Part shown: positions 3,730 to 61,779 of the stretch, one piece after another
How the letters are laid out: each line of letters starts with the position of its first letter
Position numbering within the stretch: the first letter of the stretch is position 1
NCBI RefSeq assembly: GCF_006345805.1
Contig: NW_021836298.1
Span: forward strand, 3,430-67,429
DNA length: 64,000 nt
Origin: Octopus sinensis
Lineage: Eukaryota
Direction of reading: 5' to 3'
Made by a program: the position numbers and the translations under genes
The notes under the pieces: generated by a model
Told to the model about the DNA's origin: nothing
The model's database searches: none
The model's input: only the letters and a program-made list of their open reading frames with translations

Positions 3730-3829
<100 letters not shown>

Positions 3830-17150: not shown

Positions 17151-17402
17151 GTAAGAATGCTCTTTGATGATCTGTCTGTTTGTCCTGCTTGTCTCATTGC
17201 CCTTATTGTGTAGAATAAAATGTAAAATTAAATACTATCAGCAACAATGTTTAACAAAGGGATTAGGTGTATGTTTATCCTTCTTGAAGTGGTTGTGACA
17301 TTTGTTTGTTATTGGATCTTTGATGTATAACTTGTCTGACATTGGAATTAAGCAGATTGTTAGTGAAGATTAGTCTTGAGAACAATGCCATGTAATAGAT
17401 TT

Positions 17403-17735: not shown

Positions 17736-18242
17736 ATGATTTGGCACAGATATAAGCAAAGTAAACAAAACTTAGAGAGAAACTGTAATTAAGTGATAAT
17801 TAAGTGATATAATTGCAACATTGTTAGATTATGTAAGATGTCTTAATAGAGGACATTTACGAAGATCAATCAAATGTTTGTTTTGGATCTAAATATTGTT
17901 GAATCCTTTAGTGTTCAGATTACTCTGTTAAATGTAATATTTTTTTTATTCAAATTGTTTTGAATTAATCATGCATTATCTTATATCTTTGAGGTTTCAA
18001 TGGTGCGATTGTTTATTTTTAGAATGTCAATTTAGGTTTGGTATGAGAGGCTTAATATTGCCAGTTTGGATATAAAACATATAGAATATTTGAGCCGGAT
18101 ATAGCCGGTTTAAACACTAAATGGTGAAAGTATAAAATTATTGTCCAAAGCCATTGTGATTGCTGGTTGACCATTCATGTTAGGAATGTCTCTCAATAAT
18201 AAAATTTAGATTGTTAATAAAGATAAAGACTTTTACTATAAC

Positions 18243-18621: not shown

Positions 18622-18668
18622 AATATTGTTAATACTGTTGCTGTTATTTCTTATTGTATCTTTTGCAG

Positions 18669-38026: not shown

Positions 38027-38229
38027 TTACATCATATGAGGTAGATATTCGAGTGCATCGAAACACTCACATTTCTCAAGAGCTTCTCTGAGTGTTCTGT
38101 GTGTTCGTGTCTCTGGATCACAAGTTGTAAACCATCTCCGCAGCATCTGGAAGCTCTGTTCAACGGTGTCAAGAGGATTGTCATTTTTGATGATTTCCAA
38201 TCGAACAGTTTTAATTCCTAATTCTCTTC
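38027..38229 (-). CDS. Terminal death-domain exon [67 protein letters not shown]
   Basis: tgttttgcag acceptor; LG..I..D.P....EQ..QML..W....T...L..AL death-domain pattern; 3'UTR and AATAAA shared with the paralogue. Confidence 0.88.
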
Positions 38230-41200
38230 CTGCAAAACATACAACAGTTAGAAATAACTGCAACAACATTAACAATATTATAAAAGATGTTTACTGTAGT
38301 TTGTTATAAATACAACAAAGGCATTATGTCCATAGAGGAATGAGAAGTAGTTAAGAAACATAAAATATATAAGACATCGTTCTCTATTTCTAAGAACGCT
38401 GATTAAATAATAACAAAGAGGTTGAAGTACAGGATGGAAATTGTGAAGATTTTAAAGAGAATTAATTGTAAATTACATTTGAGAATATGGTAAAGAGATG
38501 GCAGGAGAAGTGTTTGTGGGGGCAAAAGTATATGAGAACCTAGAAAATCAACATAGACGACCAACAGTCAAACCATTTGATCCATCTGTCCATTCCACTG
38601 GTCAATATTCCTGGGAGGGTTTGGGGGTAGAGGCCTCCTCCATAGGGTCCCATCAGATGCAACCATCGTAAGACGTTTTGGTTGGTTTCCTAAGCGCAAA
38701 CAACTAAGACTATGAATATGATCCAACCATTTCGTTTTTAGTCTACCCCTAGGTCTTCTACTCCATTGGTTTTGTTTTAGGAATCTCTCCTTTAATTTGT
38801 TCTTGCGACATTCCGATCATATGTTTGTAGTACCAGAGATGTGAACATGAAGAGACTCCCATATTTCTGAACTATACATTCTATTGAGTAATGTTACTCT
38901 AAAGACCCATAAATGGAATCTCATTCTTACTGTTTGATAACATCCTATGATCAATGACTAAAGCATATCACGATTTAGAAATATCTTGATTGATTTTCTG
39001 GATTGAACTCTCAGAAAAAACTAGGTACATCTGAACTAATTAAAATACGAAAAGACAAGATACAAAAATGACCTCAACGTATTATATTTTGTCCATCTGT
39101 TTGGCTTTCACTTTTCAATTCCTTCAATTTTTTTCCGATTGATTTCAAATTTCATGTATTGATGTAGAGTTGTATGCTAATTATGGAAATGAAATTCACT
39201 TTCCCCATAATTTAATAAATAAAAACTTAACAGCTTTTAAATCTACAAATTTTGTATTGTACTTTAGTCACTCGAAATCCACAAATGCATTGGCACCCGT
39301 TTCCATGGTATCAAGCGAAGGTGTTGTGTAGCCTCCTTACTCGTCTGTTACCTTTTATTCTTGCTTTTACACGTCTGTTGTTGTCACTCTGAAACTTCCC
39401 CTTCTAAGGTTGGCTCGTGTCTCTGCGAGTTTATTTGGCACAGGGATTACGGAAATTGGCAGGAATTCTGGTTTTATTATCCCCACATAATCCCAAATAA
39501 CTTTCTGTATTTTGGGGGATTTTCAGAAACTGATTGCAAATTTGTGTTCTATACATGGGAATTATAAAATTATGAAGTAAAAATCTGTGTGAGTTAAGTT
39601 AAGTTAATTTTTTGGCTCAAAAGCAAAAAGCAAGGCCATGTAGGGGGACATGTAGTTAAGTACAGGGTGGTGTTCATGTAAAGAGTTCAGGCCACTTGAG
39701 GTCAAGGGAGACTTTGAACAAAGCGGTCGTCGGCATCTTCACCATCTTGTCTGTTAATGGCGATTTAGCTGTTGTTTTTAGCACATCTCCTGACCACCTG
39801 ACATCTTCCTCGTTTCCTTGCTACTATGACATGTATTGATGTTTTTCAATATTTTTCCTCCCATAAACTCATTAAATGGAATGATCATGCAGTGAAGGGT
39901 GGTCCGTTGCTGGGATTTAGGCAAAGAATTCGGACAAACTCTGTATTTCAAACTCTGATTTGAAAAACAAAAAAATTGAAAAAGTGTATAAATTTTAGGA
40001 TGTATGAAGGTAAGGGATTAATAAATGTTTTGAAATAAGTTTGCTTAATCATAGGAATTCCCGTGAGTAGGACTCAAATTTGCAAACATTTTCTCAAAAC
40101 TCCAAAAAATAAAAAAAAAATATATAGGTTCAAATGGGTGCTTAAATCAGAATTTTCTGTTACAAACTCCTAAACTGCGTCGCAAACTTTCGTTATTTTT
40201 TCGTAATTCAACATTCCCATTTAGTTTATATTGTTTTTTTCTCGTTTTTCTAATTTTTCTCATACCTGTTATGATATTTCACATAAGTTAATTGATTAAA
40301 ACTTATTAAAACTTCCGTCGTTGAATTTTTTGTCGTCGTAATGTCGTCATCTGTTGTCGCTGTTTTGTGATCCCGCTCAAAATGCTTTCTTCCAAATCCT
40401 GTTTTCTCATTGGGTAAAAATTATCAAAATTTGATCTGCTAACATTTTAAGAAATTTTTCTGGAACAAGTGAATAAGATCAGGTTCAGTATGAAACAATA
40501 TATCAATAGTTTCCCCTTGATTTTCAAATTTCAAAAGTTAAAGCAAAAAAAAAAAGAATGATACGCATTTCTTTCACGGTGTCAATGCCATGATTTAGAG
40601 AGAAATCAATAATGGATCGGTGTTATGATAAAGCTAGAAATGAGAAGAGATTTAGTTAGTAGGAAAGAAGGCAGGACCCACCAACCTCTACGTTATTCAC
40701 CTACATAGAATAAGCCACTATATGTGGGTGATGCCTGGTACACTACTAGATGGACACTGGACAGTGGAGAGGCTACATGTCTCCCAATATACACAGAAAG
40801 CTATGAGAAAGGACCATTTAATGATGCCGTCCTGTACTCTCAAATATGTCCCCTATCTATTATTATCAAAACTGCTGACATCGGTGGATATTTTCTGAGT
40901 CACTTTAAAGAATCACTTTAAAGCTAACCTTTCAATTGGATAGAAGGAATGAGATCTTTTTTTCAGTCTGAAACTTATATAAATCAATTAGGTACTCTTA
41001 TTTTATACTCACCGACTTGTTGCCATTTTCCCCCTAAATTTTGTGCGACATCTTGGAGAAACTTTTCATCTAACACTGGAGACTCTGAAATAAATATTCC
41101 GAAATTAGATACTTAAAGTTAATTTTCTTTATTAATAATCTATATTTATTATTGTGAGAAATTCCTATCATAATTGGTCAACTGGTGACCGCTATGGTTT

Positions 41201-44200
41201 CGGTCAGCATTATACTTTCCACGGAGGCCTCATATAATAGCTCAATACTAAGGCCCACATCAAAATACACTAACCTTTCTAAATTTCCTATCTCTATTAC
41301 GGCTTCTTAAATAGTGTAATAATGTTACTATTATCTCATTTAATTATCACAGTATTTTGTTAGTTTTGTATTTCTTCCATTACATCTGTGCGAAATCTAT
41401 GACATGGCATTGGCCTCTGGCGTCTAGACTTCACTAACCAACTCTCTTCTCATTTGCTTAATTCCAATATTAACCCAGTTTGCCGTCAAACATGCAGCCA
41501 CAAACACATGGCACCTCACACCAAGTAGAATAGACATGCATCTGCTAACGTTGCTGTTGGTAATCTTTAACTAACATCACGGTTCACCATCTGATTCAGG
41601 AAATATTTGAAGACTCCTTCTTAAAGCAGCTTTTTTAAAAGCGAGAGAAATGATTAGTTCTACACAGGTGGAACACAAACTGTCCACATCACTGTACACC
41701 GGAATGTTATGTAACTCAAGAAATATTTGCAAATATTTGAACGCCATACATTCTCCATAATAAGGGCATTTTGTTCAGGTGGGTAATGGTTAGATTCTGC
41801 ACAGGGGGAGCAAAAGCATGATGTGTCTTAAAACCCTGTACACCGTCTCACACATTATTGTATGAAAACATTTGAAAAGTATTCGAGGAGGTACCTGATA
41901 AAAACTGGAATTTTGCAATATTATTTTATTCACTTAGCTTTACACGCTTACACTTTTACAGCCCTCAAAGTATTATCCATTTGAAGCAATCCTCGGCCCA
42001 GAAGCTATAATATGAAGCTGTAATATTATACTCACCAACTGGCTTTGTTGTAGAGGATGTAGGCTCTGACACCTTCGAGAATTTCCCATGCGTTGGAGCC
42101 TCTGAAAAAATATGTTCAAGTTTCAGGCATTAAAGTTTCGTTATCATTCATAATCTATATTTTATTGTTGTGAGATATTCTTATCGTCCATAATCAACTG
42201 GTGAGCACTATTTTTTCCACCAACATTTCTATACTTTTTACTGTGATCCTATTAAATGCGCCAAATGTAGGACCGTGTAATAACCCAATATATAGGTCTA
42301 CTACTAAATAGACTGACCTTCCTAAATCTCCTCGCACTATTAAGACATCCTACATAATCTAACACTATTGCACTTATCTCATTTAATAATCACTTGTTAA
42401 CACTGCTAATCTCCTTCTTATATTTAATCTAATCTATGACATGATTGTCCTCTCATCTCTAGACTTCACTAATCAACATTCTTCTCGTTTTCTACTTAAT
42501 TCCATGACAACCAAATTGGTCCTCAAAAATCGGACCACAAAACCATGACACATCGTTTCAGGTAGGATAAACATAACCCCGCTCTCTTTTTTAAAGGTCA
42601 CTGTTGGCAAACTTTAATTTTAACTGACCACATCACACTTCATCAGAATATCATCTGAATAAGGAAATATTTGAAAATATTTCAATGTCATTCATTTTCC
42701 TTAATAAACGACTTTTTTTTCAGGTGAGCAATGATTAGTTCTACAACGGTGGAGAGGTAAGCGATAACAGGTATCCTGAAACACTACTTTTGTACAAAAC
42801 ATCCTTAACAACAAAATCACTGTTCATTATTACAAAGGGGTTATATCCAAATTGAGAACTGACAATTTATTCTGAAGAATATATAAACAAAATCGAACTG
42901 GAAACATGAAATTTTGCATTTTTTTAGTAGTTTTGAATTATCAGTTGTTTTCTGTCCATCTTCAGCTTTGCCATGGTCTCACTACCCCAGTATGTATCAG
43001 TCAACAAGATAGCGTACCACCATCTTTAACTTTTGGTTTGTCTTTAACTTTTGGCATGAGTTCTCCTGCCGTTCGTAACTTCCCTTGCTCCAGCTGACCA
43101 TTCACAAATTATAGACTGCATTACTTATTTGCTTGAAACCACATTCTTGACTAAGTACTAACTCTATGGAGTCTACTAACCAGAACTATTTGCATATCCT
43201 TTTAGTCTCTTGTTAGTATTGTTATGTCAGCCATGAATATCTTTCCGTTGAGCAATTTCTTCTGGACATTCTGTTAATCTAAGTAGCATAACTATAAAGA
43301 TCACCAACCAACTGATATTGTGCAACCTACAGCTATTCCAGATCCAGAACCTGGCAGTCTTTTGTGAACTTTTATCCTATGAAACACATTTTGAAACTGT
43401 TATAGCATCTCATCATCAGATCCTTAATCTCCTCCCATTTATTAAAGAAATTCCTTGTTTCCATCAACAATGTGTGTGGTACAGAACCATAAGCATTAGC
43501 CAGATCAAGCCATACTACATCCGAATCTCTTTTATTCTTCTTTGCTTTTTATATGGCATCCCAGATTTAAAATGCATGTTCTACACACCAGACATTTTCC
43601 GGATTCTAGTCTTCTGGACATTTTCTGTCGTATAACCATTATTTTGCTGACATGTAGCTGATTTCATAGCAAGTACACCCATGTAAATCTTGCCATTCAA
43701 GATTGAAATTGGCTTCAATTGGCCACTTAGTTCTGCATTAACTTACTTTGATGAATAAAATCCTTTTGTCTTGCACCATTCATCAATCAGTCCACCTTTA
43801 TCCCACAACTCTCTAAATAGTAATTAATGCTTATAACACCTGGGCACAACATTTGTACACGTTCTATGGTACACAATCACCTCCCGTTGCAATCTCCGTT
43901 CTTGCCTTCTTCACTAAGCTTTATACTTGTTTCTTGCTGAAATCGCAAAGCTGAAATATTTGATTACTGGTTTCATTGGACATTTCAAACCAAACATGAG
44001 CAGGTAAAGATGACTTCGCTTGGGATCATTGTATATCTGCCGTATATTCTTGTTCACTTCATCTTTAGTGCATTATAATCTCCCCCACTTAACATCGGCA
44101 AAAATATCCTAGTACCATCAGAAGGGTTCTTAAGGAGCTTTTATCTAAGGTGTTCACTATCCTTTCTTCTTTCAACCCGTCCGATGTCTCTTTGAATGTA

Positions 44201-47200
44201 TTTGATTGTATTGTATCATACAGCCTCTATGAAGTTTGAAGAAAGGGAAAGAGACAACGGTTTTCTGAGCAGCAAACCAACGTCTTCCACTTGAAAAAAA
44301 AAATGTTTACTGGATGCAATGATAGATTTATTATCAGTGAAAAACGACAGGGTGTTCATATTTGGAGCGCATTTCATTGTAAGTCTGCCAGATTATGAGC
44401 GACATCAGCTAAAATAACAACAATAACTTGTCAGTAAACATTTAAAAAATATAAAACAAACAAAACCTTTGTCATTACCTCACCTGTTAAACCACAACAT
44501 ATATTATTTGGCTGCTCCAAAAGAGAACCTGAAATCTATTTTGCTTCTAATTTATCCATTTCACCAACCATGCTAACCTGATTGGATACTTTATTAAATG
44601 TCAATAGTATCGATATGTTTAATATGATTAGTTTAATGCTAAAACTTCCCATTGACAGGTAAGCATGGAAGCTGATCTTTATCATTCTGATATCAAAATA
44701 GTTCAGCAGAGAATAAACCTTACAGAAATCAATCAAGTGCTGTTATTTTATACTCACCTACAGGTTCAGCCAGTGTCTGTGTTTCCTTGACTTCAAATGT
44801 TCGATTCACTGAAATGAATATTTCCAAGTTTTAAACATTATAGAAAAATTTCTCTATCTTTATTAATAATCTATATTTTATATCAGAGATTTCTTTCATA
44901 GATAATCAACTGTTGAAGACAATGGTTTTGGTTAGAATGTTTATAGTTTCAACAGGATTACCCTGTAATTTCAATATTTACACTGCCTTCCAAAATTTCC
45001 TTTATCTTTTGAGACAGTCGACATAATCTAACAACTGTGTCATTATTTCATTTAATTATCACTTGATAACACCAATTTTTTATTAGGTTTGTCTTTCCTT
45101 TCTTATATCTGCACTGAACATATGACGTGAAATTGTGCCCTCACTTCTGCCCTTCTCTAACCAACATTATTCTCAGCTTTGCTTAATTCCAATGGCAACC
45201 AGTTTGGTTATCCATGATCTAACCATAAACACATTACACACACCACTTTAAGTGGTAGAATGGAAGTGATTCTGAAGACTCTAGGATATTTCTGACAACC
45301 CTCTTCTATATATCAACCAAACTTCCGTCTCTCCTTTGATGTCTCCTTAATCAATGCGGTGCCTCTGAAGGGGCTGAGAACTCAGTTCAATGAAATCTGA
45401 GGGGACGAAAATGCTTTATAAAATACATCTAATTAGTGTCAAATACGTATACAGAAATGTTCGACAACATAGTGTTTCCTATGAAATGAAGCAAAAATAC
45501 AATACCATCAAAACTTACTGAAACATAGGGACTATAATCACGGTTCGTATGGAGTGGTCTTGTAACAAAGAAAACAGGGTCCTCTTATAGCTCCTGTATA
45601 TTCTTGCTCACTTCATCTTTATTTCGTTATAATCTGCTGCTCTTAGCGGCTGCAAAAAGAATCCTAGCACCGTAAGCAGGGTTCTTAAGGAGCTGCTATC
45701 TAAAGTGTTCACTATCCTTTCTTCTTTCAACCCGTCCGATGTCTCTTTGAATGTATTTGATTGTATTGTATCATACAGCCTCTATGAAGTTTGAAGAAAG
45801 GGAAAGAGACAACGGTTTTCTGAGCAGCAAACGAATGTCTTCCACTTGAATAAAGACAATGTTTACTGGATGCAATGATAGATTTATTATCAGTGAAAAA
45901 TAAGAGGGTGGTCATATTTGGAACTCGTTTCATTGTAAGTCTGCCAGATTATGAGAGACATCAGCTAAAATAACAAGAATATCTTGTCAGTAAACATTTT
46001 TAAAATACAGGCGTAGGAGTGGCTGTGTGGTAAGTATCTTGCTTACGAACTAGATGGTTCTGGGTTCAGTCCCACTGTGTGGCACCTTGGGCAAGTGTCT
46101 TCTTCTATATCTTCGAGCCAACCAAAGCCTTGTGAGTTGCTTTGGTAGACAGGAACTGAAAGAAGCCCGTCGTATGTATGTATGTATGTATGTATGTATG
46201 TGTGTATGTGTTTGTCCTCCCAACATTGCTTGACAACCGGTGCTGGTGTGTTTCCGTCTAGGTAATGCATCGGTTTGGCTAAAGAGACCGATAGAATAAG
46301 TACTAGGCTTACAAAGAATAAGTCCTAGGGTCGATTTGCTCGACTAAAAAGGTGTTGCTCCAGCATGGAGACAGTCTGAAACGAGTTAAAGAGTATAAAA
46401 CAAACAAAACCTTTGTCATTACCTCACCTGTTAAACCACAACATATATTATTTGGCTGTTCCAAAAGAGAACCTGAAATCTATTTTGCTTCTAATTTATC
46501 CATTTCACCAACCGTGCTAACCTGATTGGATACTTTATGAAACGTCAATAGTATCGATATGTTTAATATGATTAGTTTAATGCTAAAACTTCCCATTGAC
46601 AGGTAAGAATGGAAGCTGATCTTTATCATTCTGATATCAAAATAGTTCAGCAGAGAATAAACCTTACAGAAATCAATCAAGTGCTGTTATTTTATACTCA
46701 CCTACAGGTTCAGCCAATGTCTGTGTTTCCTTGACTTCAAATGTTCGATTCACTGAAATGAATATTTCCAAGTTTTAAACATTATAGAAAAATTTCTCTA
46801 TCTTTATTAATAATCTATATTTTATATCAGGGATTCCTTTCATTGATGATCAACTGTTGAAGACAATAATTTTGGTAAGAATGTTTATAGTTTCAACAGG
46901 ATTACCCTGTAATAGTTCAATATTTACACTGCCTTCCAAAATTTCCTTTATCTTTTGAGACATTCGACATAATCTAACAACCGTGTCATTATTTCATTTA
47001 ATTATCACTTGATAACACCAATCTTTTATTAGGTTTGTCTTTCCTTTCTTATATCTGCACTAAACATATGACGTGAAATTGTGCCCTCACTTCTGCCCTT
47101 CTCTAACCAACATTATTCTCAGCTTTGCTTAATTCCAATGGCAACCAGTTTGGTTATCCATGATCTAACCATTAACACATTACACACACCACTTTAAGTT

Positions 47201-50200
47201 GTATAAACACTCAAACCTGATCTCCTTCTTAAACATTACTGCATGTAATGATTAGTTTTCAACTTCCTGCATCACTGTTCACCAGAATGTCAGCTGATGC
47301 ATGAAATGCTTTAAATCACCTTAATAGAGCAGTGTTTATAAAGGTGAGTGAAGATTACTTCTACACAGGTGGAACAGAAAATGATAACAGGTGTCCTCAA
47401 AGAGGATACACTTGCACAAACTTCACTCTACTACAGGTAACTCTTCATCCTTACATTATAGCTGTGAAAAGATCTGAAATGGTAGAATGGAAGTGATTCT
47501 GAAAACTCGAGGATATTTCTGACAACCCTCTTCTATATATCAACCAAACTTTCATCTCTCCTTTGATGTCCCCTTAATGCGGTGCCTCTGAATGGGCTGA
47601 GAACTCAGTTCAATCAAATCTGAGGGGACGAAATGGACATCTCTGTAGAAATATTTACCTGACAGAAAACGGTCGTCCTGATGTCGTAGTTAACAACATT
47701 ACAAGGAATATGAAACCCTGCTCACACCCCATTCCACCATCACTGTTTTACCACATTTGTCACTAATGATCATTGATGTTAACTAATTGAAAATGTTTCT
47801 AAAATGTTTTATAAAATACATCTAATTAGTGTCAAATACGTATACAGAAATGTTCCACAACATAGTGTTTCTTATGAAATGAAGCAAAAACACAATACCA
47901 TCAAAACTTACTGAAACATAGGAACCATAATCACGGTTCGTATGGATGTGGTCATGTAACCAAGGAAAATTGTAAAACTACAGAGAGTAATAAGGTGTAG
48001 AATGTTACTCGAAGATGCTAAGTTCTGTTGAGGTTCTACAATTTGAGAAATGATCTACCAATGAAAAGAAGATTCACAATATACAATATGATATTTAGAG
48101 GCCTCTGAAACTCGTTCCGGGTGTAAAAATCGCGTTTTTGACAATTTTCAACTCGCCAGTAAACCATGTGTCGTATTCAACAATGGATCGAAACTCATTC
48201 TCCAAGATTGTATACATCTACACTTTATTTGTTCAAAATCTCAAATTCTCTTCTTATCTTCTTCATAATTAATTTTATTTTCCAATATGTGCTTTTTAAC
48301 AAAATTGCACAGTTCTCTGACAAAACTTTTATCACACAAGGTTAATAAAAGTGACAGGACCAGCAAGTTCGAGGAGGGAGTACATTGATTACATCGACCC
48401 CAGTACACAACTGGTATTTTCCTATTGACCCTGAAGGGGTGAAAAGGCGAAGTCAACCTCGGCAGAATTTGAAATTAGAACCTAAAGACGGACGAAATGC
48501 AGTTAAGTGCATTAACGATTCTGCCAGGGGTCACCTTATCTATTATTTAATAATATTAAAGCGGCGAACTAGCAGAATCGGTGGCGTGCCGAACAAAATG
48601 CCTAGTGGCGTTTCATCCGTCTTCACGTTCTGAGTTTAAAATTCCACCGAGGTTGTCTTTGCCTTTTATTTTTTCAGGGTAAATAAAATAAGTACCAGTT
48701 TTGTACTGGGGTCGATATACTCGCCTCATTTCCTACCCTGAAAATGATCACACAAGATCAATAAAAGGGCAGATATAAGCCGCCTATTTGGTAAAAAGGA
48801 TCTTATTTTACATATAAAAATTTATATTTTAAATCATATTATTTTCATACTGAAATGCTTATGGTATTAAGGTAAAACTCCTAATTACAATTTGAGATGT
48901 TATTGATTTACAATTCATTGATTACATATTAACAGACGATTATCTAAATAGATCATTATTATACGTTTTGTATTTTTGATTGTAAAAATAACTAGATATA
49001 AACGATGACAACCGCTTCTGGATGAGAGCAGATCCTCAGGGGCCAGCTTATAAAACCTGGCTCTCTGTATCAGGTGCTCAAACCAATCAGATAATGTTTG
49101 GTTAGGGCACCCGACAAGCATTGCTACAGATCGAGGAACGCCGTGGCCGAAGTCATGCGTTGATTGGTGCATGAAATTAATAAATCTTGGTTTTCATCTG
49201 AGAGTTCAATGATACAACCAATGTACCAATCATTTTCATTCGTGTATCCAACATATTTTCAGGACTTTAACTTTGAAATATCTTGCTCAGATGCTGGCCT
49301 CTCCTCACCTAAAAGAGTGAAATTGTCATCAGCTGATATCTTCTTCGTTAGAAGATCAGATCTTGAAGAAGGTACGAAGCGGTGATGGGATCGTGTGCCA
49401 ACTGATTTCACTGAGCTGCTGATTCGTGAAAGCAAATCGAAGCTGTTTTCATTTTGGATGACATCGGCTGCCGACATGTCAAAGAACATTATCTCTGGAA
49501 TGCTTGCACATGCTCAGCCATACATCTTGCAACCTGTGAGAAAATGTCTTTCCTGGTTGCTTGTAGACTTGCTTTAATCAGCAACACATTTCTTCATCCT
49601 ACTGATTCCCTCATATGTCCTTTTTCCACATGACATGGCAAAGAAATACGACTCCGCTTCAAGGCCTTGATCATTCTGATGATGACAGAGATTTGTTTGG
49701 CGTCTCTAGTTCTTGTATTGGTCGGCTGCACCGTCACTGAAGTACAGGAGATGGTTTATGAATGGAAGTTCTGTCTTTATATGCGATATCACCCTCGTAA
49801 TAAAAGCATGCACTATGGTGCTGTCATGTTTCAAACAATCAGATATGACACAGATTGAAGTGCATTGTGGGTTTGAACCAGTCTTATAACAGATCACGAA
49901 TGGATGAATATATTGGCCTGGGAGATGTTCCGATGAAAACCTTGCTCCGAATCCTTCACTACAAAACTATAATTTTCTGCCAAGTCTGACAATACTCTCG
50001 CATGATTTGATGTCAGATCATCTTTCTGATGAAAAAGGAGACTAGTTTGAGCCTTTGCTATGAAATGGGGTTGATGCAGAGTATCAAATACATTTTTAGC
50101 GGTTTGAAGGAAATCATTCACTGGGGAAGTTAGGCACATCAGGAAGGCCCAGTCCACATAAATCCTCGTTACTAAATCCTCTGAGTCAAAATCACGTGAT

Positions 50201-51249
50201 TAAAATATGTCCAACACTTCAGTCCACTCAGCTGGCGAAAATATGTAATTTTACAGCGGACTAAATCAAAATCAAAATCGATCAACATCAATGGAAATTG
50301 TAGCTGTGATACCAGTGCCGGTGGTACGTAAAAGAACCATCCGAACGTGGCCGTTACCAGTGCCGCCCGACTGGCCTCTGTGCCGATGGCACGTAAAAAG
50401 CACCTTCCAATCGTGACCGTTTGCCAGCCTCGTCTGGCACCTGTGCCGGTGGCACGTAAAAAGCACCCACTACATTCACGGAGTGGTTGGCGTTAGGAAG
50501 GGCATCCAGCCGTAGAAACTTTGCCAGATCAGACTGGGCCTGGTGCAGCCTTCTGGCTTGCAGACCCCAGTTGAACCGTCCAACCCATGCTAGCATGGAA
50601 AGCGGACACTAAATGATGATGACTAGCGTCCTATTCATGGAAAAATATATAAGCCGGGGGAACCGGGAAACCAACCCTATGCTTTTTATGATGTAATGTG
50701 GTCTAACATAATTAGGTACAGTTACTTTCTACTCACCAGGTGGTTCTGCCAACATCTGGACTTCCGGTTTTGACGACTTTGGACCCTCTGAAATAAACAA
50801 TTTCATGTTTTAAACACTGTAGAAAAAATTCTTTATCATTATTAATAATCGATATTTTATTATTGTTAGACAATCCTATCATCATTGGTCAACTGGTGAC
50901 CATCATGCTTTTGGAGAGCATTTGTATAATTTCTTGAGTATTACTATGTAACGATTCAAAATTTAGGTCCACAACAGCCTAAACTACACTTAACAACCCT
51001 TCTCTGTCTCTTAAGGCATCCAGCAATTCTAACAATTCTGAAATTATCTCATTTAATTATCACCTAATAACAACAGATTCTCTCTTAGTTTCGTTTTGGT
51101 TTTCTTATGTTTGTTCCAGATCTTTGACAAGACATCGTCATTTCACCTCCAGAGATCTCTAATCAATATTCGTCTCATCTTCTGCTAAGTTCAAATGTCA
51201 ACCAAGTTGCGCATCGAATATCCAACCCCAAACACGAAACACCACTTCA

Positions 51250-51293
<44 letters not shown>

Positions 51294-52577
51294 GTTCTCT
51301 TTGTTATTGGTTACTACTAGTAATCTTTAATCTTAATTACCCACATCACAGTTCTCCAGAATGTAATCAGATGTGGGGAAATATCTGAAGATATTTCAAT
51401 GTCATTCATCCTCCTGAATAAAGCAGGTCGAACAGAAAGTGACATCAGGTCTAACAGGAAGTGATATCTCGTGTCCTAAATTAACACACTACATTCACAC
51501 AAAACCTCTTTAACGACATAAAACTTGTCATCCAAACATTATTGCTGTGAAAATATTTGAAACGGTTCAGAAGAACTGATACTCAGGAATACTAATCTAT
51601 ACATCAATCAAAGTTTCCCACCCTTTTGATGTCCCCTCTCTAATGTTGGTCCCTAAACCCTCAGTTGAGATTTTCTTATTGAGTCTCCTATTTTATAAAG
51701 GCTCCCTCTTATATTCATATAACTGCAGTTGTTTTTAATTATCAGATTCCGAAGATATTGATAAATCATTAATCACTCTAATCACACACAAGATGTCGGT
51801 ATTTACTGATAGAACCTTGGTGATTTATTGGTATTTAGTCACCATTTATAATTCAGTATTCTTTATTATTTTTATGTTGCAGAAATCAACCATCTTGAAG
51901 TGTGACAAGTCTTCTAATTGGACAAGAACAAAGTTTAGTGGGAGTAGTGAGAGACATAATATGACAGAGAAAAAGACACCTGGAACATCTTTTATCAAAA
52001 GTGTGCTTGATTAAGGCAGAACTGGATCTACACAACAGGAAATACAATATTCCACACCATACAGCCCAAGAGACAAACAGACAGATCATACAGTATTCTT
52101 ACCCAAACTATTTTTGCTCGTTATATTCTGTCCACACTTGAGGCATTGTTTAGGTATCTTTTGGGGACAGCATTTCTTACACAGCGAAAGATGTTTACAT
52201 GGAAAGAACGTCTCTGTGGCCACTTCGTCTTCACAAAACACACATCTGAGGAACAAAAACATGAACACATCCCATTAATAACATTCATTTATAACAAATA
52301 TTACATTGCGTGCATATTTACAGTAGAGAATATTATGCGACACCACAATTAAACAATTACATATGGGCGAATTTGTGAGTATATAAATGCAGACCCAGAC
52401 ACACAGACACAGACACAGGCACACACACACACACATACACACACATATATATATATATATAAATGGACACAAATATTAATAAGTATATGTCATGACATTG
52501 ATACATCACAAAAACTGATTTACGCAAAGTGAACAACATATATTCCAGAAATATAATTCACTTATATATATATATAT

Positions 52578-54188: not shown

Positions 54189-55214
54189 ATATATAGACAT
54201 ACATACATACATACATACGTACGTACGTACGTACGTACGTACATACATGCATACATACATGCATACATATAACACTTGATTGTATCTAATCTGTTTTAGA
54301 AGTCGTCTATACTTAGACATTTGACTTTGAATTTTATGGATGGACAGATAGGACACAATTCCTACAGCTTCATGTATGGCTGATCCATGCCACAAAACAG
54401 GTCATTGTTCTAAATTAGAGTAATGACTTTAGATTTATATACGATATGTGTGTACATAACCAGGGAATTATTTTCAAAAGTGATGAGTTGAATGCAGTAA
54501 ATGTCATGTTTCCATCTGCCATCACTGCACCACAAACTTCAGATTGATCTCAGGCCATTACAAGGTACATTGTTATTCTATGACTGAAAGACTGTGAGAA
54601 ATAGTTCAACTACCTGATTGGTCCCTTCAGTGCCTGATCCATGCGTCTTCCTCCACCATGGCTGTGGAATAAATAGCAAGTTACATTTCGTTACACAGAG
54701 ACACTCTAATTTACAGTAGAGAATATTATGCGACGCCACAATTAAACAATTACATATGGGCGAATTTGTGAGTATATAAATGCAGATACAGACACACAGA
54801 CACAGACACAGACACACAGACACAGACACACACACACACACACATACACACATATATATATATATAAATGGACACAAATATTAATAAGTATATGTCATGA
54901 CATTGATACATCACAAAAACTGATTTACACAAAGTGAACAACATATATTCCAGAAATATAATTCACTTATATATATATGTGTGTGTGTGTGTCCGAGTCA
55001 GTCGCCATGATAGATTGTTAGCCGCTACACACATTTTTTTCTCTCCTTGTTCCTATCCTTGTTTTTTTTTTCCGTGTCCCTTTCTGTAGAAGAGCGAAGG
55101 CTCGAAACGTAAAAGACTTTTTCTATTCCTTCAATACCACCTGTCATCGTCTTTTGTTTTTTTCGTAAACTCTCCCTATATATATATATATAATAATATA
55201 TATATATATATATG

Positions 55215-56932: not shown

Positions 56933-59900
56933 TACATGTATGTATCTATGTATGCATGTATAATACGTATGTATGTATGTATGTATTCGTGTATGTACGC
57001 TCATTGTATGTGTTTGTAGGCGATTTTCTCAGGATAGCTCACATGGACATGACTGGCTGGGACAGAGAAGACAGAGGAATAATCTGTTGGTAGAGAGATA
57101 AATTCCATCACTTCACTATTTACTTGTACATTTTCTCATTGGTCCCAAATCTTTAAAATAGGGAATTGAGAGAGGTGGGTGGGGATTTTAGGAGAGGTAT
57201 AACAGTCAACGCAACCAATCATTTGAATGTAATCAAAATAGTGTCCTTTCTTTTAATTAGCTTAACATCTGCATATTGTTTATTGTTCTTCTTACTGTTG
57301 TTGTCTAACCTTTCATTAAGCTACTAAGACAGTATAATGTATCAGTAGAATTAAAACAATATAAACATTTAAACATGGTTATATACAAAATAGAAAATGT
57401 AATGGTTTATCTTGTCATTGCCAGTGAATACTTACTGCGGTGGGAATAACATATTTAACATCTTTTTTAAATTTTCCTTTTTTATTAGGTCCAATGGTGT
57501 TCTACCACTTTTGTTTTTACAGTAAAAGTTGGCCCCGTGGTGGGCTAGGTAGCTGGCAACTACCACACCAGAGCACCTTTCTTCGTTTCCCAGTTTCAGC
57601 TCTACGCAGAACTACAAATGATGAAATATAAAATGATGAGTTAAAGATTACACAAACATATACTAAAGATGCCCCAAATTACACAACAGTTCAACTACAT
57701 TTACACATAGTTTTGTTTCTCCAGTGATTAAACTATTCACACAGCGTTGATTTCTTACATCATCTCTTAGTTGAGTCCACTTTTCATTATCATTTGTTTT
57801 ACTTTACGTTCTACATTAAGACAAAAATTATGATCATTATATTGACAAAACGCACATTAGTGGTCAACGTTATTGCTTAACAATGATATTTAATGAGTAA
57901 ATATTTACTTGCCAATCACAAATGTCACAAACTATTCAATAAAAACACAATATAAAGTTATTATAACATCAAGTCAAATATACACAATATAAGGACAGAA
58001 ATGTCACAATAATGAAAGACAACAAACCAACAAGAACCTATCTCTACAACTGGCTTGATAAAGCCAAATGGCCACAGCAAGAGAAATACTTACGGAAGAG
58101 TATTGTACATATAAGTACTAGCTTAAGGTGACCCGCTCTACGCGTGGGTGAGGGTGTGATTGTTACTTTCTGTTGCTTCCTTTGTTTCTTATCGCCATAT
58201 TCACCCTCTTTGTTCCTCTCTCCTTTCTCTCTCACTTCCTCACTCTCTTACTCTTCCTTTATCTCGGACTCTCCCTCACTTTCTCTTGCTTTTTATCTTT
58301 CTCTATCTCTCTATCTTCCATTTATGAAAAATTAGATTTCCGTGCTTAAATTACAAATCTTCTACTTTACCATGTTGAAAATTTGATTGAAATCGGGCAA
58401 AAGGTGTCCAATCTAAACCCCCAATTGTCCCCCAAAATCAATAAAATCCCTATTTTCACACCAAAACGACCACAGTAGCGCCCCAAAAGTCTCTCAAACA
58501 ATTTCTCACCGCAAGTTACCCCCTCTTTTAAATTGTAATCCCCTTCCAGGCCCAATTACACATCTTTTTACATAAAAATCCAATTTGTATCATCGTTCGC
58601 CTTCTTCATTTGATAGATTAGAAATACATACCCGGTCTTGTTCGGGATTAAAATAGTTATTATTGTTTTACTAGTTTTGGTATAATAACCCGATTTCATT
58701 CGGGTCTAAACGGGCCACATTTTAAAAGATGAGGGATTTTGCCCTAGAGTCCATGCCTTTCAATTGAGCAAATTCGAAGTTCCAATACAAACTCGCTAGC
58801 ACTTTTAACATAGGTGTGTTTATTTTTAGCACAATCCAACCACATATGCACACAGTATATATATAAATTAACACAATATATCTGTTTAATAATATCTGTT
58901 ATGATTGTGCGATGGAGGTGGGCGATATTAATTCACCGTTCTAAAAGACCTGTGGCGAGAATATTTAAACTTTTGCGGTTGTCATCGCTTTCTGTCTATA
59001 GATACAGACAGATGTACAGTGAGAGAGGTGGTGGAAGAAAGAGTGACAGAGAGACGTCGTTATAGAGGGATCAAAAAATCACTCTTTTTGCCATAGCAAC
59101 CACATCTTATAGCTTGCGAATTTTAACCATCGCGGGTCTCATTCTCACCACGCATTTAGTATCCTTGCCAATTTGCAGCTCGATCCTTGCCTCGGTTGGC
59201 TGCCATTAACCTCCAAAGCAAATGTGCATAAAATTTTCGTCAAAGGACTGTTTTATAGATATGAATAACACCACAAATAATATAAGTTATACCAGAAAAG
59301 AGAACAGCAACAACATAGCAAGGCCTTCAGACATAACAACTAAATCAACACCACATAGACATATCCACGCAGATCAATAATGTTTCTATAATTAAGTGGA
59401 TTGGAGAGAAAAACAGGGTATATAAGGCATCGGATTTTGTGCGCAAGAGAGAAGTCTACCATGGTATGGTTATGTGATGCATATGGATGAAGATAGCTTC
59501 ATCAAGAAGGGGTGATCTCTCATTGTGGAGGGAATGTGTGGAGGGGGTAGACCCAGAAAGACGTGCAATAATGTGGTGAGAAAGGACTGTCAGACGTTGG
59601 GCCTCACAGAGGGGATGAAATGGGAGCGATACTTTTGGCAGTCTGCTGTACTTGAGATAATATGCCAAGCTAAGTCGTCATTGTCCTTGCATACTGTCAT
59701 GACCCCTGTATCATTCTTCGTCTGAGATATCCTAATCTTGTGGGATCATGGGTGCTGATGCTTCGGAAAAATCACCCATGCTGGTGTCACATACAAATAT
59801 CCGTGTCGGTGCTGCAGAAAAGCACGCAGTACATTATGTAAATTGGGTGGCATTAGGAAGGACGTCCAACTATCGAAACAATGCGAAAAGAGATATGGAG

Positions 59901-61078: not shown

Positions 61079-61351
61079 ACCCACACACAAACACACACAC
61101 ACACACACACACACATAGTCACAAACAATGTGAAAACTTACCTGATCTAACATGGTCATGTGCTCCACCTCAGAATTAAATTCTTTGGTTGCTAACGCCA
61201 GGTGCAGGCAATTATCTCCTCCATAGTCGAGAGCATTTACATTCGCACCCCTGGCTATCAGCCTCTGAATTATTCCGAGGTGACCGTTCGAAACAGCTTC
61301 AAGCAATGGTGTCCTATATTTTTTGTTCACAATTTCTAAATTCACCGAATC
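38027..61351 (-). CDS. Spliced gene encoding an ankyrin-repeat / RING-HC / linker / death-domain protein (Mind bomb-like ANK-RING half plus DD); 5' exons not found in the window
   Basis: Nine GT-AG exons: 61142-61351, 57436-57611, 52103-52245, 50737-50787, 46702-46752, 44758-44808, 42036-42101, 41013-41084, 38027-38229. They total 1023 nt, phases are consistent (0,0,2,1,1,1,1,1,1), there is no internal stop, and they give 340 aa plus TAA. AATAAA lies at 37760-37765 (minus). Confidence 0.85.
38570..38960 (-). mobile_element. Old RTE 3' remnant
   Basis: Degenerate RRPRGR.K..W motif. Confidence 0.5.
39592..39755 (-). mobile_element. Short 3' fragment of the same CR1 family
   Basis: Reverse complement of about 30115-30265, including the 3'UTR. 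Confidence 0.85.
41013..41084 (-). CDS. First death-domain exon (E)[23 protein letters not shown]
   Basis: 72 nt, phase 1-1; L..VA..LG..W...G is the start of a death-domain fold. Confidence 0.85.
42036..42101 (-). CDS. 66-nt phase 1-1 linker exon (E)[21 protein letters not shown]
   Basis: ttttttcag acceptor, gtgagt donor. Confidence 0.75.
43150..44300 (-). mobile_element. Hero-like (restriction-like-endonuclease clade) non-LTR remnant; part duplicated at about 45595-45850
   Basis: GCVEH..IWDAI..AK....[15 protein letters not shown] and PISILNGKI motifs. Confidence 0.7.
44758..44808 (-). CDS. 51-nt phase 1-1 linker exon (V)[16 protein letters not shown], copy 1
   Basis: Same splice sites as copy 2; lies in a recent tandem duplication. 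Confidence 0.72.
46008..46394 (+). mobile_element. SINE family B inserted in one copy of a tandem duplication
   Basis: Empty site visible at about 44445-44455 in the other copy. Confidence 0.88.
46702..46752 (-). CDS. 51-nt phase 1-1 linker exon (V)[16 protein letters not shown], copy 2
   Basis: ttcatttcag acceptor, gtgagt donor; one synonymous difference from copy 1. Confidence 0.72.
48990..50160 (-). mobile_element. DNA transposase relic (SDxAENY / [11 protein letters not shown] / HGK..DG-type family; Sola-like, superfamily uncertain)
   Basis: Frameshifted ORFs 49894-50157, 49706-49897, 49259-49489 with [53 protein letters not shown]. Confidence 0.7.
50262..50623 (+). mobile_element. SINE-like family C (GGAAGGGCATCCAGC core, AACCCATGCTAGCATGGAAAGCGGAC-(ATG)n tail)
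   Basis: Other copies ~6505-6705(+), 7563-7960(-), 15296-15590(-), ~59745-60000(+). Confidence 0.8.
50737..50787 (-). CDS. 51-nt phase 1-1 linker exon (E)[16 protein letters not shown]
   Basis: tttatttcag acceptor, gtgagt donor, frame-preserving. Confidence 0.75.
52103..52245 (-). CDS. RING-HC (C3HC4) exon CVFC..PCKH..CKKC..CLKC
   Basis: Acceptor ttcctcag, donor gtaaga, 143 nt; Cys/His spacing of MIB/IAP-type RING fingers. Confidence 0.92.
52729..52768 (+). ncRNA. Minimal type I hammerhead, same family, core CUGUAGA
   Basis: CUUU-CUGUAGA-A-GAGCGAAGGCUC-GAAA-CGU-A-AAAG; solo tail 52643-52827 ending at (TA)n. Confidence 0.72.
52981..53595 (-). mobile_element. Duplicated terminal 0.6 kb of the same Tc1 element
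   Basis: Near-identical to 55316-55931. Confidence 0.85.
53849..54091 (+). mobile_element. RTE-type LINE 3' fragment
   Basis: RWAGHIA...WT...EWYPR..KRPPGRP..RW. Confidence 0.8.
55078..55117 (+). ncRNA. Minimal type I hammerhead, duplicate of the 52.7-kb copy
   Basis: Identical motif inside the local segmental duplication; solo tail 54991-55176. Confidence 0.72.
55316..56818 (-). mobile_element. Full-length Tc1 (DD34E-like) element with ~210-bp TIRs and a dead transposase
   Basis: TA flanks; TIRs 55316-~55525 and ~56607-56818; [42 protein letters not shown]; internal stops. Confidence 0.88.
57436..57611 (-). CDS. Last ankyrin-region exon ([58 protein letters not shown])
   Basis: Acceptor tttcatcatttgtag, donor gtaagt, 176 nt, phase 0 to 2; homologous to plus-strand exon 16445-16577. 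Confidence 0.9.
58670..59070 (-). mobile_element. Non-autonomous Helitron-like element
   Basis: CCCGaatgaaatCGGG hairpin then CTAGT on the minus strand. Confidence 0.55.
59455..59680 (+). mobile_element. RTE 3' fragment, same family as 63631-63831
   Basis: WYG.V..MD...GRP.KT pattern and nucleotide similarity. Confidence 0.7.
61142..61351 (-). CDS. Ankyrin-repeat exon ([70 protein letters not shown])
   Basis: Acceptor ttttacctccacaaag, donor gtaagt, 210 nt; TPLxxA..GH and G.NCLHLA ankyrin motifs. Confidence 0.92.
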
Positions 61352-61779
61352 CTTTGTGGAGGTAAAAATGGAAAATGAAAATTTACATGAAAATCAGGGT
61401 TGATATCAATGTCATTACAGTTTTCTACTGGGTACTAGATCAAACTGATCAAATACATTTGATGTTTGTCAGTGAAATAAATCTTCCATAAGGACCTTCT
61501 ATAACCTGATACATGTGTGTGTTAGAGACATGATAAACATATTAAGATGTCCTACATTTGCCCCTCACTATAGTAAGTTGTAGGGCAACAGAACTAGAGT
61601 AAACACATGATTAGCAGATCAAGTCAAGTAAAGAAGAATTATGATTTTCTAATGTTACTTTTGACGTTGCTACATTAATAAGGGGTTCATAAAACTGCTG
61701 AGCCGGTTAGCGTCCACATGCATAAAACTAATGCGCACGCAGGCACACACACATAAACATCAGTGTTACATATATAAAT

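What the first reader, a model, noticed from the sequence alone, without database searches (positions are those of the whole stretch)
41013..51560. Linker built by serial duplication of the first death-domain exon unit, with frameshift-recoded copies
Seen: five exons (72, 66, 51, 51, 51 nt) are all phase 1-1, with tttcag acceptors and gtgagt donors. Each is preceded by a homologous 450-750-bp intron block (e.g. TAAT(C)TATATTT and TAT(C/T)TCATTTAATTATCAC recur at about 41.1/41.3, 42.15/42.4, 44.9/45.0, 46.8/47.0 and 50.8/51.0 kb). The exons are related in nucleotide sequence: DD exon GAA AAG TTT CTC CAA GAT GTC (EKFLQDV) versus 66-nt exon GGG AAA TT- CTC GAA GGT GTC, read after a 1-nt deletion as GKFSKVS. 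The 51-nt exon GTCCAGATGTTGGCAGAA resembles CTCCAAGATGTCGCACAA. Inference: duplicates of a structured DD exon were converted by indels into new disordered linker peptide, giving an extensible, potentially alternatively spliced spacer that sets RING-to-DD reach.
Basis: partly seen in the sequence, partly recalled or inferred. Interest (0 to 1): 0.8.

Follow-up and report, generated by a model that had tools for sequence, protein, structure and literature searches.

The report
Octopus RING–death-domain linker exon array
In an octopus gene that joins a RING ubiquitin-ligase finger to a death domain, the flexible linker was built by repeatedly duplicating the death domain's first exon with its intron; the copies mostly kept the reading frame, so this is a clean but not revolutionary case of tandem exon duplication.

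Summary
On the minus strand lie five phase 1-1 exons of 72, 66, 51, 51 and 51 nt. All have tttcag/gtgagt splice sites, and each follows a homologous 400-670 bp intron block. The gene is Octopus sinensis LOC115232124 (RING + death domain), and the window rebuilds isoform X1 exactly.

The blocks are not transposons. In 64 kb they occur only at these five exons and once in a convergent paralogue. Homology runs through each exon into the downstream intron. Paralogues and two other Octopus species carry 0-5 such units, including dead ones.

NCBI isoforms X1, X2, X6 and X7 differ by inclusion of these exons, and all 16 combinations stay in frame.

The frameshift claim is largely wrong. The 51-nt exons match the death-domain exon best in the same frame (z=4.0, p=6.5e-5). 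A 72-nt relic exon in O. bimaculoides is 10/23 residues identical in frame to a paralogue's death-domain exon. Only about 3 codons of the 66-nt exon look frame-shifted, on weak evidence (p about 0.02).

Most likely this is tandem duplication of the exon-plus-intron unit, in-frame decay, a 21-nt deletion, then birth and death of cassette exons. The spacer function is inferred only.

The parts
38027..38229 (-). Terminal coding exon: the rest of the death domain (GRELGIKTV...EYLPHMM) and the stop codon.
   Evidence: tblastn of isoform X2. Exact rebuild of X1. Pfam Death PF00531 covers X1 residues 209-288.
41013..41084 (-). DD72: first death-domain exon, 72 nt, phase 1-1, encoding [23 protein letters not shown] (helix 1 and the conserved Trp). 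It represents the parent type of the duplicated unit.
   Evidence: The AlphaFold2 model has a helix at 208-228 with pLDDT 70-89.
41085..41682 (-). Intron block upstream of DD72, homologous to the blocks of all linker units and of the paralogue.
   Evidence: blastn 64-66% identity, E 1e-22 to 1e-29. Alignments.
42036..42101 (-). L66: 66-nt cassette linker exon ([21 protein letters not shown]).
   Evidence: Its upstream intron is 83-88% identical to that of the 51-nt exon RPKFKEKASQRVAEPV in locus L001.
42102..42781 (-). Intron block of the L66 unit.
44758..44808 (-). L51a: 51-nt cassette linker exon ([16 protein letters not shown]).
44809..45260 (-). Intron block of the L51a unit.
46008..46373 (.). 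Insertion of about 366 bp, SINE-like, present between L51a and L51b only in the L51b copy. It accounts for part of the 1944-bp unit spacing.
   Evidence: Repeat families D5 and D8 have 1555-bp spacing against 1944 bp for D1 and D2. Sequence read. The SINE class was not verified (ARAGORN found no tRNA).
46702..46752 (-). L51b: 51-nt cassette linker exon. It differs from L51a by one synonymous base and is the orthologue of the single L51 exon in O. vulgaris.
46753..47401 (-). Intron block of the L51b unit.
50737..50787 (-). L51c: 51-nt cassette linker exon ([16 protein letters not shown]).
   Evidence: Orthologous copies in L002 and L003 are 96-98% identical. A dead copy lies in O. bimaculoides L005.
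50788..51583 (-). Intron block of the L51c unit.
52103..52245 (-). RING-finger exon (CVFCEDEV...QNITSKNSL). It ends in phase 1, so it can join any linker exon or DD72.
   Evidence: Pfam zf-C3HC4_3 scores 28.1 bits against a cut-off of 27.
54614..54661 (-). Unrelated optional 48-nt cassette exon ([16 protein letters not shown]), present in X1, X6 and X7.
57436..57611 (-). N-terminal coding exon ([15 protein letters not shown]...MLFPP), MIB2-like.
61142..61393 (-). Ankyrin-repeat exon. Its last 18 nt (61142-61159) hold the annotated start, MTMLDQ.
   Evidence: Pfam Ank families..
17250..18241 (+). The only other copy of the intron block in the window. It lies in a convergent RING/death-domain paralogue, is interrupted by an inserted element at about 17400-17740, and is not followed by a first death-domain exon.

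Best explanation
The minus-strand gene is Octopus sinensis LOC115232124. It encodes a small MIB2-like RING E3 ligase fused to a death domain.

Shown:
- The unit that was duplicated in tandem comprises about 500-700 bp of upstream intron, the 72-nt phase 1-1 first death-domain exon, and at least 40-170 bp of downstream intron.
- The extra exon copies stayed spliceable. They share tttcag/gtgagt sites and have lengths divisible by three.

Inferred from alignments:
- The copies diverged mostly in the original reading frame. Hydrophobic helix-1 positions were replaced by polar residues and proline: LQDVAQNL in the death-domain exon against xQxLAEPV in the linkers.
- A 21-nt in-frame deletion gave the 51-nt form. 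It removed codons 14-20 and kept the last three codons (QQV became EPV).
- Three old types of unit (L51c, L51a and L66/p3) then underwent birth and death. Examples are the recent L51a/L51b tandem duplication, triplication in another locus, loss of a donor site, and deletion of an exon.

Shown by annotation only: the units are included or skipped as cassette exons, giving a linker of 0 to about 78 residues.

Inferred, not tested: the linker is a disordered, length-tunable tether between the ligase finger and the death domain that docks into death-domain assemblies.
For: Gene model and annotation:
- Ten window exons translate exactly to isoform X1, and all 16 subsets of the four linker exons stay in frame.
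- Pfam finds Death (39.4 bits) and a RING finger (28.1 bits).
- Isoforms X1, X2, X6 and X7 differ by linker-exon inclusion. Paralogue LOC115230672 X1 and X2 differ by one 17-residue exon.

Duplicated units:
- Pairwise block identity is 64-66% over 413-671 bp. Copies occur only at these exons and once in the convergent paralogue. Motif counts are 6 observed against 0.03 and 0.21 expected.
- Homology continues past each exon into the donor-side intron. DD72 against L51a is 82.6% over 46 nt (E 2e-7). DD72 against the p3 units runs about 170 nt. A 14-unit alignment from three species shows the same.
- O. bimaculoides LOC106867311 joins RING directly to the death domain, and the window's paralogue has one block and no linker exon.

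Reading frame:
- The 51-nt exons match DD72 best at offset 0.
- The column-permutation test gives 38.5% identity against 26.6% (p about 6e-4).
- The codon-permutation test gives 41.7% against 28.7% (p 1.8e-4). The BLOSUM62 test gives z=4.0, p 6.5e-5.
- The 72-nt exon RLNLEENRSHSTSKKLAVEQQQV in L006 is 10/23 identical in frame to SVNLDEKLLHSVAKKLGNKWQQL, the first death-domain exon of the paralogue in loci L002/L003. It scores 48 in frame against 17 in the other two frames.
- The 78-nt exon in L001 keeps TTA GGG (Leu-Gly) in frame.

Birth and death:
- L005 has an open 51-nt exon whose donor is ttgtat.
- L004 has two decayed units.
- O. vulgaris L003 has a block whose exon is deleted.

Disorder: in the AlphaFold2 model the linker (residues 125-202) has pLDDT 23-45 and the death domain 70-89.
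Against: - Exon-level similarity of the 51-nt exons to the death-domain exon is modest. Another in-frame register (offset 12) reaches 35% against 38.5%. Most unconstrained local alignments are not significant. The case therefore rests mainly on positional homology and on the longer relic exons.
- The intron-block tree is star-like at 60-72% identity, so the order of the old duplications is unresolved.
- A second alignment of the 3' end is nearly as good. GTGGCAG of the linkers can match ..TGGCAG of KWQQ, which would need a 23-nt deletion plus 2 nt. A frame slip of 1-2 codons there cannot be excluded.
- Transcript evidence is only NCBI model isoforms. I could not see reads.
- The O. sinensis contigs are short (28-67 kb), so copy numbers and the mosaic structure could be partly assembly artefacts.
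- The structure model used only 7 sequences, so low confidence is weak evidence of disorder.
- Nothing tests the spacer function.
Confidence: 0.78

Rival explanations
1. The duplicated death-domain exons were turned into new peptide chiefly by indels that shift the reading frame, so the linker is read from a different frame of the old helix-1 sequence.
For: - L66 TTCTCGAAGGTGTC matches DD72 TTCTCCAAGATGTC at 12/14, with the two exons one base out of register (p about 0.024).
- Against its closest relative (the p3a exon), L66 is best aligned with a 2-nt and a 1-nt gap 8 nt apart. That puts about 3 codons (F-S-K) in a shifted frame.
- Frame-0 translations of the linkers end in x-W-Q-x-x-L, which recalls K-W-Q-Q-V of the death-domain exon.
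Against: - The 51-nt exons match DD72 best at offset 0 in the same frame.
- Longer relic linker exons (72 and 78 nt) match death-domain exons in frame, one with 10/23 identical residues. Out-of-frame translations of the 72-nt relic score 17 against 48 in frame.
- L66 is back in frame at GTG TCA GAG CC.
- The W-Q resemblance is explained equally well by a clean 21-nt deletion between two similar stretches of the parent exon.
Confidence: 0.08
2. The shared intron blocks are independent insertions of a transposable element that carries, or created, splice sites. On this view the small exons are exonised element fragments and not copies of the death-domain exon.
For: - The window is rich in mobile elements. 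It holds a reverse transcriptase at 2656-3843, a GIY-YIG ORF at 22291-22740, Tc1/mariner-like fragments near 53.4-56.4 kb, and SINE-like insertions inside the units.
- The blocks have no coding capacity.
Against: - All six copies in 64 kb lie at a fixed distance upstream of a phase 1-1 exon of one gene family, always in the orientation of the gene.
- In about 160 kb of six related loci, every copy lies inside a gene of this family, next to a live or decayed unit exon. The only copies without an exon are the two block fragments left in L003 where the exon was deleted. No copy lies elsewhere.
- Homology continues through the exon into the donor-side intron.
- The block also precedes the genuine first death-domain exon in every paralogue and species examined.
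Confidence: 0.04
3. Part of the array is an assembly artefact. On this view the L51a/L51b pair and the junction to the L66-DD72 part come from collapsed or duplicated haplotypes or from chimeric contigs, so the true gene has fewer linker exons.
For: - The O. sinensis contigs are short: 67, 55, 39, 31 and 28 kb.
- The window is a mosaic. 46.2-63.8 kb is about 95% identical to the O. vulgaris gene. 42.3-47.2 kb is about 94-97% identical to another O. sinensis contig. 38-42.2 kb has no close counterpart.
- O. vulgaris has one L51 exon where the window has two.
Against: - L51a and L51b differ by about 2.4% in their introns and by a 366-bp insertion.
- NCBI isoforms X1 and X2 contain both copies.
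- O. vulgaris keeps an exon-less remnant of a second L51 block at the matching place.
- The older units (L51c, L66, DD72) are far too diverged to be haplotype copies.
Confidence: 0.1

Closest known systems
Tandem exon duplication as a source of alternatively spliced exons (Kondrashov & Koonin 2001 and Letunic et al. 2002, from my own knowledge; human survey in PMC8373072)
   Same: The exon and its flanking intron are duplicated in tandem. The exons are symmetrical in phase, and the copies are used alternatively in splicing.
   Different: The known cases are mostly mutually exclusive substitutions that keep the fold. Here the copies are additive cassettes. They have lost the structural role of the parent segment and now lie outside the domain as linker.
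Titin PEVK exon array (PMC6469411)
   Same: Short exons each encode one Pro/Glu/Val/Lys-rich disordered module. They expand and contract by tandem duplication and loss, and differential splicing changes the length of the segment.
   Different: Titin has many more exons and a demonstrated spring function. Descent of PEVK from an exon of a folded domain is not known to me. Here there are 0-5 exons, their origin is traceable to death-domain helix 1, and their function is untested.
RING E3 ligases that act in death-domain signalling: vertebrate MIB2 acting on RIPK1 (PMC5912950) and mollusc IAPs that combine RING and death domains (PMC8917759)
   Same: A C-terminal-type RING finger (zf-C3HC4_3) with MIB2-like ankyrin context is linked functionally or physically to a death domain.
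   Different: This is a very small protein (258-292 residues) with RING and death domain in one chain and no BIR, MIB/HERC2 or ZZ domains in the annotated product. No biochemical data exist.
New coding sequence by frameshift after duplication (Raes & Van de Peer 2005 and Okamura et al. 2006, from my own knowledge)
   Same: A duplicate free of constraint could be re-read in another frame. A stretch of about 3 codons in L66 may be such a case.
   Different: The bulk of every linker exon is still in the parental frame.

Membership tests
Tandem duplication of an exon-plus-intron unit | Copies are adjacent, in the same orientation and within one gene. | tested here: met
   Five units lie at 41.0-51.6 kb, all on the minus strand.
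Tandem duplication of an exon-plus-intron unit | Homology covers the intron on both sides of each exon, which gives positional homology of the exons. | tested here: met
   Upstream blocks are 64-66% identical over 413-671 bp. The donor-side intron is 82.6% identical over 46 nt (E 2e-7) and alignable for up to about 170 nt.
Tandem duplication of an exon-plus-intron unit | The exon sequences themselves are detectably related. | tested here: met
   The signal is modest for the 51-nt exons (p 6e-4 to 6.5e-5). It is clear for the 72-nt relic exon, which is 10/23 residues identical to a paralogue's death-domain exon.
Tandem duplication of an exon-plus-intron unit | Symmetrical phase, so that copies can be added or skipped. 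| tested here: met
   All exons are phase 1-1, and 16 of 16 subsets stay in frame.
Transposable-element exonisation | Copies are dispersed at unrelated sites and in both orientations. | tested here: not met
   Copies were found only inside genes of this family, next to a live or decayed unit exon (or, in L003, as fragments where the exon was deleted), in the window and six loci of about 225 kb in all. No whole eukaryote genome could be searched.
Transposable-element exonisation | Element hallmarks: terminal repeats, target-site duplications, a tail or an ORF. | not tested
   No ORF was seen in the blocks. Terminal repeats and target-site duplications were not looked for.
Frameshift-recoded duplicate | Similarity to the parent is best in a shifted frame over most of the exon. 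| tested here: not met
   Offset 0, in frame, is best for the 51-nt exons against DD72. The relic exons match in frame.
Frameshift-recoded duplicate | A local frame-shifted segment bounded by compensating indels (L66). | tested here: inconclusive
   A 12/14 match sits one base out of register (p about 0.024). The exon is back in frame within about 9 nt.
Death domain (Pfam PF00531) | Profile match above the curated cut-off. | tested here: met
   39.4 bits against 22.6, X1 residues 209-288.
Death domain (Pfam PF00531) | Helical-bundle fold. | tested here: inconclusive
   The AlphaFold2 model has five helices at 208-285 with pLDDT 70-89. The alignment held only 7 sequences, and no fold search was run.
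RING finger zf-C3HC4_3 (PF13920) | Profile match above the curated cut-off. | tested here: met
   28.1 bits against 27, which is marginal.
Alternatively spliced cassette exons | Annotated products differ by inclusion of the exons. | tested here: met
   X1 and X2 hold all four linker exons, X6 skips L51c and one L51, and X7 skips L51a and L51b. LOC115230672 X1 and X2 differ by one exon.
Alternatively spliced cassette exons | Direct transcript reads across each junction. | not testable with these tools
   No RNA-seq or long-read data are available here.
Disordered length-setting linker (PEVK-like) | Predicted lack of fixed structure. | tested here: inconclusive
   pLDDT is 23-45 over residues 125-202 and the composition is rich in P, E, K, T and V. 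The alignment was shallow.
Disordered length-setting linker (PEVK-like) | Linker length changes the function. | not testable with these tools
   This needs biochemistry.

The most novel reading that the evidence does not exclude
The repeated intron-exon units may be more than a spacer kit.
- Their near-identical copies in different paralogues could act as crossover points. L51a-type units are 92-99% identical between genes whose death-domain units are only 60-68% identical (introns) and whose terminal death-domain exons are 41-68% identical in protein. Such crossovers would swap RING heads and death-domain tails, giving octopus a fast-evolving set of E3-adaptor chimeras.
- Strongly conserved islands in the introns (GTGATAATTAAATGAGATAAT, GGTCACCAGTTGACCA) could control which cassettes are included.
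- Some linker variants may have gained docking motifs. One exon changed 20% against 5% for its introns, and now reads TQEE, a TRAF-type [PSAT]x[QE]E pattern.
Probability: 0.15. Interest if true: 0.65.

Novelty: new variant of a known kind. Interest (0 to 1): 0.4.

Why it matters
- It is an unusually legible example of how a piece of a folded domain can become disordered linker. The parent exon, full-length relics (72 and 78 nt), shortened forms (66, 51 and 46 nt) and dead copies all survive in a few octopus genes, with their introns as independent markers of descent.
- It shows that this conversion did not need frameshifts.
- It gives a natural series of RING/death-domain proteins with 0-5 linker modules. 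That series could be used to test how tether length affects an E3 ligase recruited to death-domain assemblies.
- It does not change any general principle. Tandem exon duplication and cassette splicing are well known.

Tried and rejected
- Unconstrained local nucleotide alignment of linker exons against the death-domain exon was mostly not significant. I relied instead on register and permutation tests and on positional homology.
- The neighbour-joining tree of intron blocks was meant to order the duplications. It is star-like at 60-72% identity and cannot do so.
- I looked for an O. vulgaris or O. bimaculoides orthologue of the window's own death domain (38-42 kb). Protein searches found none and the fetched loci hold none.
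- ARAGORN, used to classify the SINE-like insertions, found nothing.
- A HMMER search of 1.84 billion representative proteins with the linker alone found only four Octopus sinensis proteins and one unrelated catfish repeat protein. No wider family emerged.
- The literature searches I ran, which were few and narrow, found no description of this gene family or of a death-domain exon turned into linker.
- The transposon explanation and the general frameshift explanation were considered and rejected, as set out under the rival explanations.
Full report
**What is there.** The window is AT-rich animal DNA full of microsatellites and mobile elements. The finding lies in a gene on the minus strand. 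Five exons sit at the stated places:
- 41013-41084, 72 nt, here called DD72
- 42036-42101, 66 nt, L66
- 44758-44808, 51 nt, L51a
- 46702-46752, 51 nt, L51b
- 50737-50787, 51 nt, L51c

Each has a tttcag acceptor and a gtgagt donor and is open only in phase 1-1. The gene's other exons have different splice-site flanks. Five copies lie upstream of the five exons. The sixth is on the other strand near 17.8-18.2 kb. blastn aligns the intron blocks pairwise at 64-66% identity over 413-671 bp (E 1e-22 to 1e-35). The L51a and L51b units are 97% identical and form a 1944-bp tandem duplicate.

**Which gene.** A protein search with the conceptually spliced exons found Octopus sinensis LOC115232124 at 100% identity. 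Ten exons in the window translate exactly to isoform X1, which is 292 residues long. Pfam finds a RING finger (zf-C3HC4_3, residues 81-124) and a death domain (residues 209-288).

DD72 encodes residues 203-225, that is helix 1 and the conserved Trp. An AlphaFold2 model places a helix at 208-228 and gives the death domain pLDDT 70-89. The linker (125-202) scores 23-45, but the alignment had only 7 sequences. Upstream lie a MIB2-like exon and an ankyrin exon.

**Are the small exons used?** NCBI isoforms differ exactly by these exons. X1 and X2 contain all four linker exons. X6 skips L51c and one L51. X7 skips L51a and L51b. All 16 subsets keep the frame. A paralogue, LOC115230672, has one 17-residue linker exon that X1 includes and X2 skips. 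These are model isoforms. I could not see the reads behind them.

**Transposon or duplication?**
- The block has no copies elsewhere in the window.
- In six related loci (about 160 kb from O. sinensis, O. vulgaris and O. bimaculoides) every copy lies inside a gene of this family, next to a live or decayed unit exon. The only exon-less copies are two block fragments in O. vulgaris L003, where the exon was deleted.
- Homology does not stop at the exon. It runs through it into the donor-side intron: gtgagtataaaataacagtacctaattgattt is shared. DD72 against L51a is 82.6% over 46 nt (E 2e-7). DD72 against the p3 units of locus L001 is alignable for about 170 nt.
- The one extra copy in the window lies directly after the RING exon of a convergent paralogue on the plus strand. 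That paralogue has no linker exons.
- O. bimaculoides LOC106867311 splices RING directly to the death domain.

So the units are tandem duplicates of the first death-domain exon with its flanking intron. The transposon alternative is rejected as far as these data reach.

- Placed on DD72, all four kinds of 51-nt exon match best without gaps at offset 0, in the same frame. Mean identity is 38.5% against 26.6% after column shuffling (p about 6e-4). Another in-frame register reaches 35%, so the signal is modest.
- With six linker exons and four death-domain exons, a codon-permutation test gives 41.7% against 28.7% (p 1.8e-4). A BLOSUM62 test gives z=4.0, p 6.5e-5. The aligned peptides read [16 protein letters not shown] against [48 protein letters not shown] and [16 protein letters not shown].
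- Longer relic exons settle the point. In O. bimaculoides L006 a 72-nt linker exon, RLNLEENRSHSTSKKLAVEQQQV, is 10/23 identical in frame to SVNLDEKLLHSVAKKLGNKWQQL, the first death-domain exon of the paralogue in loci L002/L003. It scores 48 in frame against 17 in the other frames. A 78-nt linker exon in L001 keeps TTA GGG (Leu-Gly) in frame.
- The 51-nt form is explained by one in-frame 21-nt deletion. It removed codons 14-20 and kept the final QQV, which became EPV by single-base changes. An alternative of a 23-nt deletion plus 2 nt would shift only one or two codons.
But L66 is back in frame at GTG TCA GAG CC, which equals GTG GCA GAG CC of its nearest relative (p about 0.018). So about three codons (F-S-K) are shifted at most.

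**History.** The intron blocks fall into deep lineages that are 60-72% identical to one another: L51a type, L51c type, L66/p3 type, and each paralogue's own death-domain unit. The tree is star-like and does not order the events. L51c-like and L51a-like exons also occur in O. bimaculoides, so these types predate the split of the three species.

Recent events are clear:
- The L51a/L51b duplication (about 2.4% intron divergence).
- Three L51a-type exons and two p3 exons in L001.
- An exon-less second L51 block in O. vulgaris.
- An open 51-nt exon with a ruined donor (ttgtat) in O. bimaculoides.
- Two decayed units in L004.

Linker number therefore ranges from 0 to 5 among paralogues and species. 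A HMMER search of 1.84 billion representative proteins found the linker module only in four Octopus sinensis proteins, plus one unrelated catfish repeat protein. The close O. vulgaris homologues fall within those 50%-identity clusters.

**Mechanism and function.**
- Shown: duplication of the unit, retention of splice sites and phase, in-frame divergence, and gain and loss of units.
- Supported by annotation only: cassette splicing.
- Inferred: the linker is a disordered tether of adjustable length between the RING finger and the death domain. From established knowledge, death domains assemble by homotypic interaction. Vertebrate MIB2 ubiquitylates the death-domain kinase RIPK1 (PMC5912950), and mollusc IAPs combine RING and death domains (PMC8917759). 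A RING/death-domain fusion would plausibly be recruited to such assemblies. None of this was tested here.

**Comparison and novelty.** The closest known kinds are tandem exon duplication giving alternative exons (PMC8373072, and older work from my own knowledge) and the titin PEVK exon array (PMC6469411). The difference here is the source: an exon of a folded domain, traceable through surviving intermediates into additive, disordered cassette exons. I rate it a new variant of a known kind and of moderate interest.

**Caveats.** The O. sinensis contigs are short, and the window is a mosaic relative to other loci. Copy number and junctions therefore need long-read confirmation.

Noticed in passing
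window 16448-18859 (+): A convergent paralogue holds an N-terminal-type exon (16448-16587), a RING exon (17009-17143), one intron block and a terminal death-domain exon (18669-18859). It has no first death-domain exon. The block ends at about 18241 and unrelated sequence follows. Splicing RING directly to the terminal exon would stay in frame and give a death domain without helix 1. O. vulgaris models P0012 and P0014 look the same.
   Followed up: partly
window 38000-63831 compared with L001, L002, L003: The gene is a mosaic. 46.2-63.8 kb is about 95% identical to the O. vulgaris gene, whose death domain is of another type (68% protein identity in the terminal exon). 42.3-47.2 kb is 94-97% identical to another O. 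sinensis contig (L001). 38-42.2 kb (L66, DD72 and the terminal exon) has no close counterpart. This suggests unequal crossing-over within the repeated units, or chimeric contigs.
   Followed up: partly
L002 8473-8523 (also the inverted copy at 707-757): One L51a-type exon (NRTFKDKETQTQEEPV) differs from its relatives at 10-11 of 51 bases, while the flanking introns differ by about 5% (Fisher p 7e-5 to 6e-3). It has four amino-acid changes and now reads TQEE. This could be a burst of selection or a small conversion patch.
   Followed up: partly
intron blocks, e.g. window 41336-41356 and 41177-41192 (minus-strand gene): Islands such as GTGATAATTAAATGAGATAAT and GGTCACCAGTTGACCA (an imperfect palindrome) are nearly invariant in units that are otherwise about 65% identical, across three species. 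They may be splicing or transcription control elements.
   Followed up: no
L005 about 9232-9282; L004 about 7495 and 11815; L003 23015-24868: Dead linker units. O. bimaculoides has an open 51-nt L51c-like exon whose donor is ttgtat in place of gtgagt. O. sinensis L004 has two decayed exon remnants. O. vulgaris has a second L51 block whose exon is deleted.
   Followed up: yes
L006 7460-7505: A 46-nt L51a-like exon begins in phase 0 and not in phase 1, which fits a different upstream exon. In the usual frame it would hit a stop codon. This is a real local change of frame at the 5' end of one unit.
   Followed up: partly
window 54614-54661 (-): An optional 48-nt exon ([16 protein letters not shown]) lies among Tc1/mariner-like fragments (about 53.4-56.4 kb). 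It may be exonised from a mobile element.
   Followed up: no
window 2656-3843 (-), 22291-22740 (+), 56187-56405 (-), 415-456: Mobile-element ORFs: reverse transcriptase RVT_1 (E 2.5e-32), a GIY-YIG endonuclease domain, and a Sleeping-Beauty-type HTH fragment. There is also a short TTAGGG x7 array near the start of the window.
   Followed up: partly
protein P0019 (O. sinensis XP_036354558.1, separate 38.7-kb contig): A longer MIB2-like paralogue has ankyrin repeats and a RING finger. These are followed by a stretch of about 25 residues that looks like a long linker exon (ASPKFADKGVQTDLQLLEPTSEQS; its exon structure was not mapped) and by three L51a-type exons. The model then runs into an intron. 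L001 looks like the missing 3' half of such a gene.
   Followed up: no
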